Source: Pelomyxa schiedti
Lineage: Eukaryota; Protista; Evosea
NCBI GenBank assembly: GCA_020536535.1
Contig: JAHLWZ010000987.1
Span: 1-32,961 of the forward strand
Length of the DNA stretch: 32,961 nucleotides
Reading direction: 5' to 3'
In this document: piece after piece, positions 2,885 through 29,000 of the stretch
How the letters are laid out: each line of letters begins with the position of its first letter
Position numbering within the stretch: position 1 is the stretch's first letter
Notes under the pieces: model-generated
What the model was told of the DNA's origin: nothing
Databases searched by the model: none
The model's input: only the letters and a program-made list of their open reading frames with translations
Translations under genes and position numbers: made by a program

Positions 2885-3104
2885 GAGACGGGGCACTTCA
2901 CACGGAAGTGCCCTCTGTCAAAAATAAGTGGGATTGTGATATGCCTGCCTCCAAGTGTGCTTGAGAGGCATTTCAAAAATAGGTGCGGAAAAGCGGGATT
3001 AGAGCACAGCGTTAGCCTCTAGGACCCCCTTTAAAAGAGTTTCCCCAAGATCGCCGTGACAGACTTGTTCCCACACCAGAGCATTCACTCCCTTAGGTAG
3101 GTAT
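2885..3104 (-). ncRNA. Candidate novel U1-like Sm-class snRNA (5' end AUACCUACCU)
   Basis: TCCCGTAAT element at -62. U1-like 5' end. Closing helix GGGA-GTGA-ATGC/GCAT-TCAC-TCCC. 10-bp helix 3068-3077 with 2982-2991. Sm sites TATTTTTG at 2974-2981 and 2919-2926, each followed by a hairpin. G-U pairs favour the minus strand. Confidence 0.7.
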
Positions 3105-17655: not shown

Positions 17656-17664
17656 AACCATAAT
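17656..17664 (+). promoter_or_regulatory. DUSE-like element AACCATAAT of the U1 gene
   Basis: One mismatch to WCCCAYAA. Starts 63 nt upstream of U1 +1, matching the known Dictyostelium DUSE spacing. Confidence 0.7.
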
Positions 17665-17718
17665 TCCGTTTGCCCGGGGGCCGTATTCCCAGCGCGAAGT
17701 GTAAGATGTGTTCCTTTC

Positions 17719-17878
17719 ATACATACCTGACTGCGCACACCCTTGATCACCAAGGACGGGTGTGCTGTGGTGACTCCCGACTTGCACTCCTCGGCGGTCG
17801 CTGCATGAATTTCCGAAAGGAAAGCTCAGCAGTGTAATTTTTGTTTCGCTGGGAGCCGGCGCTCTGCGCTACTCCCTG
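17719..17878 (+). ncRNA. U1: U1 snRNA with variant 5' end AUACAUACCUG
   Basis: Helix H ACTGC/GCAGT. SL1 GCACACCC/GGGTGTGC with loop GATCACCAAG (U1-70K site). SL2 loop CTTGCACTCC (U1A site). SL3 TTTCC-GAAA-GGAAA. Sm site AATTTTTG. SL4 GGGAG...CTCCC. Confidence 0.95.
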
Positions 17879-17970
17879 AAAAGATGAAAAACAATGGCTT
17901 GGGATCCCTCTGGCAAGGGATCTCTTCATCTGAATCAAACGAAACTAAGTAGGGGCGTAACAGCGAAGAA

Positions 17971-19118
17971 ATGAGTTGCGTAGAGGCACCCACAATTACT
18001 GAGGTGGCGAGAGGTTGGGGAGTAATAGTTACATTGAAAAACCTCTTGCAGTCGAGGCACGGGTATGTTATTCATTTCCGGTCTCCTCTAAAGTAAACAG
18101 AGACTCTCGCGGGGAATTGTTTTCGGTTTGTGTGTTTGGAATCGGCCTTTCCGGTGGATTCTCACCTGAATTTGCTGAGGTTTCGTGTGCCCTAAGGGCT
18201 TATTCCTGTAAGTGTGAGCAGGGCTCATGCAACTGCGACCACAATTGTGCCAATAAGGTACCGTGTGAGCTGCATGTTGTGGATATCTGTGAGGAAGCAC
18301 TTCGAAAAGTGTCAGCCTCAACAGTGCAGTACTGGCCACCACACCCCTCATTTATGTACAATATGCCAGAGAAACGCATGTCAGTTGTGCAGCTGGTCAT
18401 GGATTGTTCAACAGCGGTAGCATGTGAAGCTGTCAGTGCAATGCCGTTGGAACACGAAGAAAGTACTCAAGTGACACCACAACCATGTGATATACCTCCC
18501 CCTCCACCTCCGACTCCACCTAAAAGCCCCCTGAAGAGCTTGATGGGAAATGACATTGGCAGTACCACATGGAGAATTCGTGAAATCCACTTCCCAGAGT
18601 GCAAGTTGGGAATTCCGCGAGTCGAGAATCTTATCGGAGAAGCTGCAACGACTGTATGTCCCATTGGCAGGCACGTATCATGCAAATGCTGTGCCATTGT
18701 GACTCACTTGACAGACTTTTCCTCAGTCGTGATGCAGCCATCATCTTTTGACTGCATTATTGCCATGCACTCATTGCTTTACCTCTTCAATCCCAAGGCG
18801 TATGGTGCAACAATACTCAGCACAACCAGCTCCCACAATTGTGAAATGCCCAAGTCAGCTCGCCGCTCCTACTGCGCGGCACTGGCGAGGGCTCTAAAGC
18901 CCACTGGCGGGGCATTAGCCATCAGCTCAGAGACTTACTATATGCTCACGGATGTAGAACACCTTGGTGAGATTGGGGTGTCCAAGCCACCGCTGGCCTC
19001 CAGCCATCAAGTGTCATTATGGGAAGGCCACTGGCCACCTGGTGAATGGGTGCTACTTCGAGAGCCCCACAGTTCCTCGGTCTGGGAAACTTATGTATTT
19101 TGCCGTCACCCTGCCTGA
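17971..19118 (+). CDS. Class I SAM-dependent methyltransferase-like protein, CheR-like motifs
   Basis: One short intron after MSCVEAPTITEVAR. Motifs VCVFGIG, LHVVDICEEAL, FDCIIAMHSLLYL and ALKPTGGALAISSE. Confidence 0.65.
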
Positions 19119-25838: not shown

Positions 25839-26048
25839 GGCCGATGATCTACTTTATGTTTTTTTTTGTTTGTTGTGTTTGGTGTTTTTCGTTTTGAAAA
25901 AACTCTTTCCGTTCTGGGACATTATTCTCTGACTCAGCCACTCCACAGCCATTCACCCCTTTAATGCGGACGGAACAAGGCACTGCATTCTGGCCCAGAA
26001 CATTGAGGTGCTGGGCCTGGAACTTGTTGATCTCTGCAAGTTCCCGGC

Positions 26049-29000
26049 ATGAACGTTTTCGATCTTCTCAGAATAGTCACATTTTGTAGGTTTTTTCAGC
26101 GGAGAGTCATGCGGGGCGTGTTGTACGTGCCGCCGGAAATAACGCACAATCGGTCGAGATCTCACTCACTGCACCAAGAGAAACCAGGTGCCACAAGCAC
26201 CATCGCGTCAGCCGTAGCCGCATTACCACCTTCTCTCACAACACCATCTACGCACCCGTCGTCAGTCGTACCAGAAAAATCACCGCCTACATCGTCGCAG
26301 TCCTCTTCGTCGCCTTCGCCGTCACAGTCGCCGTCGGTCCCCGCAGATGCATCGAAACCGACGCCTGCAAAAACTACAATAGCGGAGGTACACAGCACTA
26401 CTTTGGGCGACCCAAACCACCGACGGAGTTGGTCTGGTTCAAAAGAGGCGCCCACGCCAACCACACCACCACAACCAATTAAACCAAACACTGCAAATAC
26501 TAACGAAACACCACCCTCGGATCCGACTCACAGACGGAGCTCTTCTGGTTCAAAGGCACAAACGAGTGTTCAACCTTCTAGTCTAACACCCCAGTCTGTG
26601 GATACAATTACCAAACCTACATTCATTCAACCCACAACTAATGCTTCAACACCAACACTCACTAAAACCCCAACAGTGACGATCACAAGCCCATCATCAA
26701 CAAAACCTCCCGCCACCTCGAATACCACTCCACTCAAACCAGTTAACTCCACATCACCTAATACCGCTGGAGCCACCAAAACTAATACAGCCTCTCCTTC
26801 ACATCCTGCATTAAATGAGTCCGTCTCCCCTCACGCAATATCCCAACCAACACGACCAGCAAGTGCAGAACACATTTCTCTATCTACCCAACCTACGTGG
26901 TCTAACGCTACAAAGCCATCTCCCTCCACAAACCCTAGTTCTGCACATCCCGAGCCACCCCCTACAGCAAAAAATTCTCCTCCAAATTCACAAAGCACTG
27001 TCTCTCAATTCATGTCTGCGCCGCAGGTGTCCAATTCTCCAGTGATGCAACACCCTGTACTGTATGGTCCCCAAGGTGGGCTTGATAATACTAATACTGT
27101 GTTCAAAAACCCCCCTCAACAAGCCCCAATGCGGTCATCAACAACCAATTCTCAAAATATATCACGTGCACGTTCACCTTCACCAGCCCCAATACCATCC
27201 TCCACACCAGCTGCTCTACCATCGAGGAATCCATCTCCCCCTACCCAACCTCGGGCACCACCTTCCCCTTCTGCAAACTCTTCCGTAGCACCTCCAATCA
27301 CTCTCAACAAGCATTCCACTCACTCTACACCCCTAACATCATCTACCACAAGTGCCCCAAAAAAAGCATCAAAAAGAAGAAGTCTTAGCATCCCAGCCAG
27401 TGCTGTTGCTCAATCTCTTGACAGAGATTTACTAACGAAGGAGGCATTTAAATATGATCCAGAGTTTGAGAGAGCTGCTCAAGTACAAATTATTGTTCAA
27501 TTTTCTTGCTTGTGACTGGAATCTCCAGACGTGGATTGAACATGTAACTAAAGAACCACTGCCAACTGGGGTTAGCCTACCAGCTGCACTGAAAGATGGG
27601 TCAGTCTTATGTAAACTGTTGAATGCAATAAGACCAAACACTGTAAGAAAAATACATGTAGGAGTAAAGCTAGCAGCCTTTCACAGGTGAGAATCCAAGT
27701 TAATAAATAAAAAAAACCCTAATATATTGGTTCTTTAGGGAGAATATACAGAACTATTTTATTGGTTGCAGAACACTTGGGATGAATGTGACGAGTCTTT
27801 TTGATGAAAACGGTTTTTTTTCCCATTTACTCTGTGCTCCGAGTGACCCATATTACAACAGATCTATATGAAAATAAAAACTTTAACATTGTCCTCATAA
27901 ATATTCAAGCACTTGCGGCACTGGTGAGTAACCTCCAATAAAAATTCAGACTTGTTTACATACAGCAGGTTACAAAACTTTTCCCCACATTACCAAAAAT
28001 GGATATACCACGGCCAAATGATTGCCTGAGTGTTGCATTCAAAGATGGCACCAGCTCCAAATCAAAATTTGAAGTCACTCCAGAGCAACAAGAGTATATT
28101 GGCTGAAGGTTTTCTTGTTATAATTATATTCAGGCAACTCACTGATTTGACTGCTTGGACCAACTCACATTTAGTTGAATGCGGATTATCTGGTATTACA
28201 GATGTCACAAGGGAACTGCAAAGTGGCGTCGAGCTCATTTTCTTACTTGTACAGAATCGCCTGCTGCAAAAGTGATTAATGACATAGCACAGGAGCGACT
28301 TACTGGGCAGAGTTTGGGTATATACTCGGCGGAGCCTGAAACGGCATGGAATAAGATGCAAAACATAGCGTTGGTGCTAAAATTTGTTATTGAGCAATCT
28401 GGCATGCATCCATCTGAGCTCTGCTCCTGCACCGATTTGTACATCGGGAAACCACAAGCAATAATAAAGTACTTCATCTTTCATGTTGTTCACACCTCTT
28501 ACCTACAATCTCAAGGCTTCTTACTACGTTACGAGATAAATTTGATATGGTTTCAGCTCAGAATTATCGGAATATTCTAATGTTGTCTATCTTAGGCTTG
28601 CACTCTCTCCAAATTACCATCAGCTCAGAGAAGGCCCTACATCATCTCGGTAAATTTCTTTCCCTATTTTTTTTCCCGTTAAGTATGCAAAAAGGAAGTC
28701 GTCTCCACTGAACAACGTTACGTTACACAGTTGCAACGGTAGTCCTAGCAAAAACTCTGCCCCAATTGACCCTTTTTACCATTACAGTATCGAGGAAGGA
28801 CTAATAACTCCTGCAAAATCCTGTGCTCCTCAAATGATGACTAAAGAAGAGTTATCAGGGATTTTTGGTAATATTGATCAAATCATGGTCCGGCATGCAG
28901 CAATTCTTCGTCAACTTCAACAAGGCTATCCTCCAGGAGATCCCCAGGCATTATTAAGAATAGACACAATTGTTGAAGTATTTACTGGTCTGTGAGTTTT

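What the first reader, a model, noticed from the sequence alone, without database searches (positions are those of the whole stretch)
17719..17878. Intact U1 snRNA with U5A change, complementary to GUAUGU donors
Seen: all U1 structural elements are present, but the nearly invariant AUACUUACCUG is AUACAUACCUG, and the SL1 loop has G>C (GAUCACCAAG). Inference: A5 gives a Watson-Crick pair with +4 U. A hand count of 26 donors from my own dehydrogenase and CUL4 models gave +4 = T 12, C 5, G 5, A 4, consistent with U1 co-evolving with a GURUGU-type consensus. Established: yeast GUAUGU donors are read by a canonical U1 with a mismatch, so a compensatory U1 change would be unusual.
Basis: partly seen in the sequence, partly recalled or inferred. 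Interest (0 to 1): 0.8.

Follow-up and report, generated by a model that had tools for sequence, protein, structure and literature searches.

The report
A5-variant U1 splicing RNA gene
This is a real, structurally intact gene for the U1 splicing RNA with A instead of U at position 5 of its intron-reading arm. It is one of ten such genes beside eight standard and two G-variant U1 genes in the amoeba Pelomyxa schiedti, whose intron starts show no preferred fourth letter; the same U1 change is already reported from the slime mould Physarum.

Summary
Window 17719-17878(+) is a U1 snRNA gene (Rfam 75.2 bits, cut-off 69.5) with 5' arm AUACAUACCUG, a U1-type four-way fold, an Sm site and a promoter-like motif at -62.

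A5 is not an assembly error. The genome matches the published Pelomyxa schiedti assembly (52.4 Mb, 5337 scaffolds). It holds 10 intact A5 genes, 8 canonical U5 genes and 2 G5 genes. Most A5 genes sit head to head with a canonical partner; this copy is solo.

The two body types form deep clades. Within the A5 class, 17 of 42 stem pairs show compensatory changes. U6 is invariant in 20 of 20 copies.

In 35 homology-anchored introns, +4 is U12 A11 C7 G5, the same as intron background composition. There is no GUAUGU consensus; +4 is simply free.

My best reading is that a family of U1 arm variants reads an unconstrained +4.

The change is not unprecedented: Physarum has ACAUAC, Mastigamoeba ACGUAC and Entamoeba AACAAAC (bioRxiv 2022.06.08.495308). 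This scan had already reached the three-arm reading on other contigs.

The parts
17657..17665 (+). Promoter-like upstream element ACCATAATT at -62 (a PSE-like motif)
   Evidence: The motif nCCA(C/T)AA lies at -59 to -64 in 23 of 25 U1 copies of all three arm classes. This copy has ACCATAATT, the same variant as L011.
17719..17729 (+). 5' splice-site-reading arm AUACAUACCUG; A5 is base 17723
   Evidence: The arm is identical in all 10 A5-class genes. It is unpaired in the centroid fold.
17730..17734 (+). Helix H, 5' strand (ACUGC), pairing with 17829-17833
   Evidence: Centroid fold. The helix covaries by class: ACUG/CAGU in A5 and G5 bodies, GUAC/GUAC in canonical bodies, GUUG/CAAC in L017.
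17735..17765 (+). Stem-loop 1, with loop GAUCACCAAG at 17745-17754.
   Evidence: The loop core GAUCA..(A/G)AGG is kept in all intact copies, and the two middle letters vary freely.
17766..17804 (+). Stem-loop 2, with loop UUGCACUCC at 17782-17790 (the U1A-site-like motif)
   Evidence: TTGCAC/TAGCAC is conserved across the copies.
17810..17823 (+). Stem-loop 3 (UUUCC GAAA GGAAA)
   Evidence: Compensatory changes occur in this stem within the A5 class.
17829..17833 (+). Helix H, 3' strand (GCAGU)
17836..17843 (+). Sm site AAUUUUUG
   Evidence: The site is invariant in the 10 intact A5 copies.
17851..17875 (+). Stem-loop 4 (3' terminal hairpin)
17879..17894 (+). A-rich tract just after the 3' end, a possible 3' processing signal
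   Evidence: An A-rich run follows the 3' end of nearly all U1 copies. Its function is inferred only.

Best explanation
Window 17719-17878 is a genuine U1 snRNA gene of the A5 class of Pelomyxa schiedti. It is probably transcribed from an snRNA-type promoter and assembled into a U1 snRNP like any other U1.

Its arm ACAUAC pairs with donors that have U at intron position +4. That closes the gap in the middle of the conserved core (G-1, G+1, U+2, A+3, G+5), which a canonical U1 would leave mismatched.

It works beside two other arm types. Canonical U5 pairs with +4 A and wobbles with +4 G. G5 pairs with +4 C and wobbles with +4 U. Almost any fourth intron letter therefore finds a partner. That fits the finding that +4 carries no information in this genome.

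Shown here: the gene's anatomy, the family census, conservation within each class, and donor composition. Inferred: expression, snRNP assembly, and class-specific use on donors.
For: U1 identity and fold are shown.

The whole genome holds 10 A5, 8 U5 and 2 G5 intact arms and no other arm on a U1 body.

Eight A5 genes lie head to head with a canonical-body U1 (one of these partners, L023, is decayed). The two start sites are 132-152 bp apart.

A PSE-like motif lies at -59 to -64 in 23 of 25 copies, including this one at -62.

The tree has two deep body clades (100/100): U5 bodies against A5 plus G5 bodies. Partner genes co-duplicated: the (L012, L013, L014) group pairs with (L018, L016, L004), and (L002, L010) pairs with (L009, L007).

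Identity is about 75% within the A5 class and 54% between the A5 and U5 classes.

Seventeen of 42 stem pairs show compensatory double changes within the A5 class alone.

Position 5 is fixed within each class over about 1.7 and 1.85 substitutions per site of tree length. By my rough calculation branch lengths, the chance of this at a neutral average-rate site is about 0.03. The one canonical-body copy that changed position 5 (L023) sits on a long, decayed branch.

Donors: +4 is U12 A11 C7 G5, the background composition, while +3, +5 and -1 are constrained.

Mean predicted arm:donor duplex energy is -5.44 kcal/mol with the canonical arm only and -6.93 with the best of the three arms; 19 of 35 introns improve.

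U6 is not diversified: 20 of 20 copies hold ACAGAGA plus 18 identical following bases.
Against: This copy is solo, with no canonical partner and no inverted partner motif upstream. It has a C.C mismatch in stem-loop 1 that no other A5 copy has. Its terminal branch is 0.22 against a median of 0.074. It could therefore be a weaker or decaying member.

Many donors pair poorly with every arm; several have only 4 Watson-Crick matches out of 11. U1 base pairing may thus be a minor determinant in these 41-58 nt introns.

The donor sample is small (35 introns in 7 genes). Four CUL4 junctions rest on my own reading of the protein, and six more were resolved partly by it.
Confidence: 0.65

Rival explanations
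1. The A5 class is functional, but this particular solo copy is a silent or decaying paralogue that contributes little or no RNA.
For: It is one of only two A5 genes without a head-to-head partner. It has a unique C.C mismatch in stem-loop 1, three pairs below the U1-70K-type loop. Its terminal branch is about three times the median. The first letter of its promoter motif deviates: ACCATAAT instead of CCCATAAT.
Against: All 11 arm bases, helix H, both protein-site loops, the Sm site and stem-loop 4 are intact. Its Rfam score is mid-range for the class: 75.2, where the class runs from 71.2 to 79.3. The promoter motif is at the correct distance, and the same variant occurs in the paired copy L011. 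Clearly decayed copies look different: L021, L022 and L024 are truncated, and L023 is a chimera on a long branch.
Confidence: 0.15
2. There is neutral tolerance and no division of labour. Donor recognition in these tiny introns hardly depends on pairing at +4, so position 5 of U1 was free to change. A5, G5 and U5 RNAs are used interchangeably.
For: Positions +4 and +6 sit at background composition, and many donors pair weakly with every arm. Introns are very short, with a mode of 43 nt, which fits intron-definition mechanisms that lean less on U1 pairing.
Against: Position 5 is invariant within each old, roughly 25%-diverged class: 10/10 A, 8/8 U, 2/2 G. The rest of the arm is invariant in all 20 genes, so the arm is clearly under selection. 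The canonical/A5 gene pair was kept as a unit through repeated duplication. A central mismatch costs about 4 kcal/mol on GUAUG donors.
Confidence: 0.15
3. One reading: U1 changed to match a new genome-wide GUAUGU/GURUGU donor consensus, a one-to-one compensatory co-evolution like that proposed for Entamoeba.
For: ACAUAC is the exact complement of GUAUGU. GUAUGU is the single commonest donor hexamer in my sample (3 of 35), and U is nominally the commonest +4 base (12 of 35).
Against: +4 U at 34% is not above the 40% T content of intron interiors, and A is as frequent (11 of 35). A true +4 U share of 55% or more is unlikely given 12 of 35 (binomial, my calculation, about 0.01). Canonical U1 genes were retained in eight intact copies, and a G5 class exists too.
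Confidence: 0.05

Closest known systems
Physarum polycephalum U1 snRNA with arm ACAUAC (as reported in Roy & Bowser, bioRxiv 10.1101/2022.06.08.495308)
   Same: It has the identical U5-to-A change in the splice-site-reading arm and is also from an amoebozoan. The preprint also says that further scrutiny finds both standard and modified U1 variants in Physarum.
   Different: Physarum is described as having GUAUGU as its commonest donor. In Pelomyxa I find +4 at background composition. Here there is also a third (G5) class and a conserved head-to-head canonical/A5 gene pair. I could not compare the sequences themselves, because no Physarum sequence was available to the tools.
Mastigamoeba balamuthi U1 candidate with arm ACGUAC (same preprint)
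   Same: It is from a related archamoeba and changes the same arm position. The G5 arm is identical to that of Pelomyxa's two G5 genes (L005, L020).
   Different: In Mastigamoeba the G5 RNA is presented as the clear U1 candidate, matched to a GUGCGC-type donor preference. In Pelomyxa, G5 is the minority class and lies within the A5-type body clade, and canonical U1 is retained.
Entamoeba U1 with arm AACAAAC (same preprint, abstract)
   Same: This is an archamoeba lineage in which the U1 arm has changed along with its donors.
   Different: Entamoeba is intron-poor, with a nearly universal atypical donor, and has two arm changes plus extended pairing. Pelomyxa has 7.4 introns per gene, degenerate donors and several coexisting arms.
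Saccharomycotina, Giardia and Trichomonas: +4 pyrimidine donors read by a canonical U1
   Same: Donors with U at +4 are common in these lineages.
   Different: They keep the ACUUAC arm and tolerate the mismatch: 69 of 69 yeast species searched have the canonical arm. Pelomyxa has a matching arm.
Vertebrate variant U1 (vU1) genes
   Same: These are multi-copy U1 families in which some copies carry changed arm bases (mentioned as an unresolved case; otherwise my own knowledge).
   Different: The vertebrate variants are minor, mostly low-expressed and heterogeneous. Here the variant arm is the most numerous gene class, and it is uniform and old.

Membership tests
U1 spliceosomal snRNA (Rfam RF00003) | The covariance-model score reaches the curated gathering score over the full model | tested here: met
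   75.2 bits against 69.5, model positions 1-166, not truncated.
U1 spliceosomal snRNA (Rfam RF00003) | Single-stranded 5' arm AUACUUACCUG that pairs with the 5' splice site | tested here: not met
   Ten of 11 bases match. Position 5 is A, not U. The arm is unpaired in the centroid fold. This single deviation is what defines the variant; it does not remove the RNA from the family.
U1 spliceosomal snRNA (Rfam RF00003) | Four-way junction (helix H, stem-loops 1-3), an Sm site, then stem-loop 4 | tested here: met
   The centroid structure of the RNA alone shows this. Helix H and the stems covary across paralogues. The Sm site AAUUUUUG lies at 17836-17843.
U1 spliceosomal snRNA (Rfam RF00003) | Stem-loop 1 loop of the U1-70K-binding type (AUCACGAAG) and stem-loop 2 loop of the U1A-binding type (AUUGCAC) | tested here: inconclusive
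   Loop 1 reads GAUCACCAAG, with one change at a position that varies among all the Pelomyxa U1 genes. Loop 2 holds UUGCAC. Protein binding was not testable.
U1 spliceosomal snRNA (Rfam RF00003) | Transcribed, capped and assembled into a U1 snRNP | not testable with these tools
The only support is a shared upstream motif at -62.
Compensatory U1 / donor co-evolution (Entamoeba, Mastigamoeba and Physarum type) | A changed base in the arm at a donor-pairing position | tested here: met
   A5. The same letter is reported for Physarum.
Compensatory U1 / donor co-evolution (Entamoeba, Mastigamoeba and Physarum type) | A genome's preferred donor carries the complementary base at the matching position | tested here: not met
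   +4 is U12 A11 C7 G5 in 35 introns, equal to the intron background (p=0.94 at n=33). There is no preference. The sample is small and comes from 7 genes.
Compensatory U1 / donor co-evolution (Entamoeba, Mastigamoeba and Physarum type) | The changed arm is the organism's (main) U1 | tested here: inconclusive
   By gene number A5 is the largest class (10 of 20), but 8 canonical and 2 G5 genes coexist. RNA abundance is unknown.

The most novel reading that the evidence does not exclude
Pelomyxa schiedti buffers a degenerate splice signal with a diversified reader. A family of U1 isoforms differs only at arm position 5 (U, A, G), and a U1-like RNA with C at that position, 14.6 kb upstream in this same window, may extend it. 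Together they give every possible +4 base a partner. That has released +4 from selection all the way to background composition, while U6 stays invariant. This would be the first case in which snRNA gene-family diversification, rather than a one-to-one compensatory change, explains the shape of a genome's splice-site logo.
Probability: 0.35. Interest if true: 0.75.

Novelty: new member of a known kind. Interest (0 to 1): 0.5.

Why it matters
The U1 arm is among the most conserved RNA sequences in eukaryotes, and whether splice signals and the snRNAs that read them co-evolve is an old, thinly documented question.

Pelomyxa offers an unusually clean natural experiment. Old, well-preserved U1 lineages differ at one reading letter, and two of them are kept as a gene pair. 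The genome is intron-rich, and its matching donor position is exactly at background composition.

If the classes are expressed and used on matching donors, the relation between reader diversity and signal degeneracy becomes directly testable. Suitable methods are class-specific blocking, crosslinking, and comparison with Mastigamoeba, Entamoeba and Physarum.

For this particular window the gain is modest. It is one more copy, a solo one and slightly less tidy than the rest, of a family that this scan has already met on other contigs.

Tried and rejected
I later used two 15-base U1-arm patterns in the genome search and the DNA search and say so here.

2. De novo intron finding. I tried ORF bridging with EM over donor and acceptor matrices and length, paired long ORFs with background subtraction, and a frame-discriminating codon model. 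All were swamped by chance open frames. In hindsight this is because donors carry almost nothing beyond GT. Only a roughly 6% excess of GT-AG candidates at 40-55 nt was visible.

3. More genome DNA.

4. Whole-protein NCBIfam searches of the genome for PMCA and XDH scored too few exons in the loci I held. I replaced them with exon-by-exon scans.

None had U1 features. I took none of these contigs for human.

7. Literature. No paper in the library links Pelomyxa with U1. I did not find the primary Physarum U1 paper.

8. I considered and rejected assembly error (ten diverged paralogues share A5) and foreign contamination (A5 genes sit 132-152 bp from canonical U1 genes on the same contigs).

Exons were searched one by one, by reference.

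Full report
**Observation**

Rfam's U1 model matches window 17719-17878 on the + strand over its whole length at 75.2 bits, against a gathering score of 69.5 (E 4.5e-17). It is the only Rfam family found in the window.

Folded alone, the centroid structure is the textbook U1 layout (-59.3 kcal/mol; z -2.94 against shuffles):
- a free arm (nt 1-11);
- helix H (12-16 with 111-115);
- stem-loops 1, 2 and 3;
- the Sm site AAUUUUUG (17836-17843);
- stem-loop 4.

**Organism**

The window's assembly has 52,367,397 bases in 5337 contigs. The published Pelomyxa schiedti single-cell assembly is described as 52.4 Mb in 5337 scaffolds, with 7.43 introns per gene and 98.4% GT-AG introns (PMC8887013). The matching statistics are my own check of it.

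**The gene family**

A whole-genome Rfam search gave 25 U1 matches. Reading their 5' ends shows three arm types:
- ACUUAC, the canonical arm;
- ACAUAC, the A5 arm;
- ACGUAC, the G5 arm.

An exact pattern search for the arm plus the first bases of helix H confirms the census over the whole assembly. It finds 10 A5, 8 U5 and 2 G5 intact arms, plus one unscored A5-like site on contig C1614. No other letter occurs on a U1 body.

Eight of the ten A5 genes lie head to head with a canonical-body U1 gene, with 132-152 bp between the two start sites. The contigs are C455, C448, C966, C290, C171, C716, C1082 and C22; on C22 the partner is decayed. The window copy and L017 are solo.

**Are the A5 genes real genes?**

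Five lines of evidence bear on this.

1. An upstream motif nCCA(C/T)AA sits at -59 to -64 in 23 of 25 copies of all classes. The window copy has ACCATAATT at -62 (17657-17665), the same variant as the paired copy L011. In gene pairs the two motifs face each other.

2. Almost all copies start after YTC and are followed by an A-rich tract.

3. The A5 genes are only about 75% identical to each other and about 54% identical to canonical genes. Yet the 11-base arm, the loop cores, the Sm site and helix H are kept. Seventeen of 42 consensus pairs show double compensatory changes within the A5 class alone. Helix H itself covaries by class: ACUG/CAGU, GUAC/GUAC, and GUUG/CAAC in L017.

4. The maximum-likelihood tree has two deep clades with 100/100 support. 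One holds the canonical bodies. The other holds A5 bodies, with the two G5 genes on a long branch among them. Partner genes of the pairs group congruently, so the pair was duplicated as a unit.

5. Position 5 never changed within either clade, over roughly 1.7 and 1.85 substitutions per site of tree length. By a rough calculation of mine, the chance of this at a neutral average site is about 0.03. The exception, L023, is a canonical body with A5 and U11 on a branch of length 1.0. It looks decayed.

By contrast U6 is uniform. Twenty Rfam matches score 62-105 bits (19 of them above 100), and all 20 hold ACAGAGA followed by the same 18 bases.

**This copy in particular**

The window copy is intact in every named element, and its Rfam score is mid-range for its class. 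Three features set it apart:
- it is solo;
- it has a C.C mismatch in stem-loop 1 (17742/17757) where the other nine A5 genes have C-G or G-C;
- its terminal branch is 0.22 against a median of 0.074.

The other apparent mismatches listed for it lie in stem-loops 2 and 4. They are at least partly alignment artefacts, because both hairpins fold cleanly on their own.

It says nothing special about this copy.

**Donor sites: method**

I could not use RNA-seq, and unsupervised intron finding failed. I therefore anchored introns on protein homology, as follows.
- I scanned exon-sized open frames one at a time, by reference, against Pfam or NCBIfam, or took exon matches from whole-genome family searches.
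- A small script listed every GT/GC...AG pair that joins two neighbouring exon matches in frame, without stops, and that keeps the profile coordinates continuous.

This gave 35 introns in seven genes:

| Gene | Location | Introns |
|---|---|---|
| CUL4 | window, 19.5-22.6 kb | 13 |
| Pyruvate:ferredoxin oxidoreductase (PFO) | L029 | 9 |
| ClpB | window, minus strand | 2 |
| PMCA-type ATPase | L031 | 4 |
| EF-1-alpha-like GTPase | L027 | 3 |
| Xanthine-dehydrogenase-like | L041 | 2 |
| DEAD-box helicase | L030 | 2 |

Confidence in the junctions varies. Twenty-five were picked by the rule alone: smallest departure from profile continuity, with GT preferred over GC. Six needed my reading of the protein to break a tie. 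Four CUL4 junctions (20004, 20980, 21081, 21943) rest on my reading only.

**Donor sites: results**

- Introns are tiny: 30 of the first 33 are 40-58 nt, with a mode of 43 nt.
- At n=33, -1 is G in 24 introns.
- At n=33, +3 is A19 G7 C4 T3 (p=9e-6 against intron interior composition).
- At n=33, +5 is G18 C8 T4 A3 (p=1e-11).
- At n=33, +4 is A9 C7 G5 T12, against an expectation of 8.0, 7.5, 4.3 and 13.2 from interior composition (p=0.94).
- +6 is equally unconstrained.
- With the two helicase introns added, +4 is U12 A11 C7 G5.
- The rule-only subset gives the same picture: A9 C5 G3 T8.

The donor is therefore roughly AG|GUAnGn. There is no GUAUGU consensus, although GUAUGU is the commonest single hexamer (3 of 35). 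There is also no trace of the usual +4 A preference, despite the eight canonical U1 genes.

**Mechanism**

In the standard register, U1 C8 pairs with G+1, A7 with U+2, nt 6 with +3, nt 5 with +4, C4 with G+5 and A3 with U+6. The preprint cited below uses the same register. Position 5 thus sits in the middle of the only conserved part of the Pelomyxa donor.

A mismatch there splits a helix of five or six pairs. With ViennaRNA duplex energies, GUAUG-type donors gain about 4 kcal/mol with the A5 arm. GUAC and GUGC donors gain 3-5 kcal/mol with G5, and GUAAG and GUGAG donors lose about 4 kcal/mol with anything but U5.

Over all 35 introns the mean energy is -5.44 kcal/mol with the canonical arm alone and -6.93 with the best of the three arms. 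Nineteen introns improve.

From textbook knowledge rather than a test here: U at +4 can also pair with the A of the U6 ACAGAG box, so GUAUGU donors would be fully paired at both steps.

My preferred reading is that the three arm classes together make +4 free. The reverse causation is the main rival: relaxed donors may have allowed the arm to drift. The class-wise fixation of position 5 and the preserved gene pair argue against that rival.

Some donors pair badly with every arm (for example GUCGGC, GUCCUG, GUCAAA). Other cues must therefore matter in these very short introns.

**Comparison with what is known**

Roy and Bowser (bioRxiv 10.1101/2022.06.08.495308) make these points:
- Entamoeba has a U1 arm AACAAAC that matches its atypical donors.
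- Mastigamoeba balamuthi has a U1 candidate with ACGUAC.
- Thecamonas, Mamiellales and 69 yeast species with +4 pyrimidine donors keep the canonical arm.
- The one earlier report of a compensatory change is Physarum polycephalum, with GUAUGU donors and a U1 arm ACAUAC. Their own further scrutiny finds both standard and modified variants there.

The U5-to-A change is therefore already on record in an amoebozoan, and the G5 arm in an archamoeba.

I found no paper that links Pelomyxa with U1, and that preprint did not include the Pelomyxa genome. The following seem to be new for Pelomyxa:
- three arm classes coexisting in one genome;
- the conserved head-to-head canonical/A5 pair;
- +4 sitting at background composition.

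I file the gene as a new member of a known kind.

This scan had already reached the three-arm reading on other contigs. My sample agrees only nominally: U 12 against A 11.

**Limits**

- There is no expression evidence.
- The donor sample is small and comes from conserved, probably highly expressed genes.
- The Physarum and Mastigamoeba sequences could not be compared directly.
I took no contig for human.

Noticed in passing
window 2885-3104 (- strand; the RNA starts at 3104): A second small-RNA gene in this window starts ATACCTACCT, a U1-type arm with C at position 5. It has two ATTTTTGA Sm-like sites, and the motif CCCGTAAT lies at -61, the same distance as the U1 promoter motif. It matches no Rfam family, even at E up to 10. 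A C5 arm would pair with +4 G, the one base that no U1 proper pairs with by Watson-Crick. Another finding of this scan already covers it.
   Followed up: partly
L021 (C1151:13912-14050), L022 (C1151:15335-15473), L024 (C918:64-202), L025 (C918:246-385): Three near-identical short (about 139 nt) A5-type copies have arm ATACATACCTA (G11 to A), no stem-loop 3 and a weakened Sm site. Beside one of them lies a canonical-body copy with arm AAACTTACCTA. L021 and L022 keep the upstream motif; the C918 pair does not. They are either a truncated sub-family or pseudogenes.
   Followed up: no
L023 (C22:72485-72641, - strand): This canonical-body U1 has arm ATACATACCTT (A5 and U11), a tree branch length of 1.0 and an Rfam score of 53.9 bits. 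It is the head-to-head partner of the A5 gene L003, which is itself the most diverged intact A5 copy. The pair looks decayed.
   Followed up: partly
G000:C1614:2843-2857 (- strand): One further exact hit, ATACATACCTGGTTC, was not among the Rfam-scored candidates. It may be an eleventh A5 gene or a chance match (the reversed control pattern gave 3 hits).
   Followed up: no
window 19.5-22.6 kb and loci L027, L029, L030, L031, L041: Introns are extremely short (mostly 40-58 nt, mode 43). Beyond GT they show only -1 G, +3 A and +5 G. No obvious branch-point or polypyrimidine signal was visible by eye in 13 CUL4 introns.
   Followed up: partly
G000 contigs C68, C177, C277, C804, C4, C757, C573, C379: There are at least eight loci for pyruvate:ferredoxin oxidoreductase. 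Some are nearly intron-free (C277 and C177 have open frames of about 1350 aa), while others are split into a dozen exons (C804, C757, C4).
   Followed up: no
L029 5073-5567 (= C804:65073-65567, - strand): The PFO exon match contains an in-frame TAG, although its length equals the profile span (165 aa for 165 positions). My junction solver could not place the next intron there. The cause (a short in-frame intron, an error or a recoded stop) was not examined.
   Followed up: no
G000, 20 U6 loci (for example C93:75881-75986): U6 is present in at least 20 copies. All carry ACAGAGA and the next 18 bases unchanged, in sharp contrast to the diversified U1 family.
   Followed up: yes
window 18003-19115 (+): A 371-codon open frame starts 125 bp after the U1 gene and has no Pfam match. 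The 494-codon frame at 26031-27512 has none either.
   Followed up: partly
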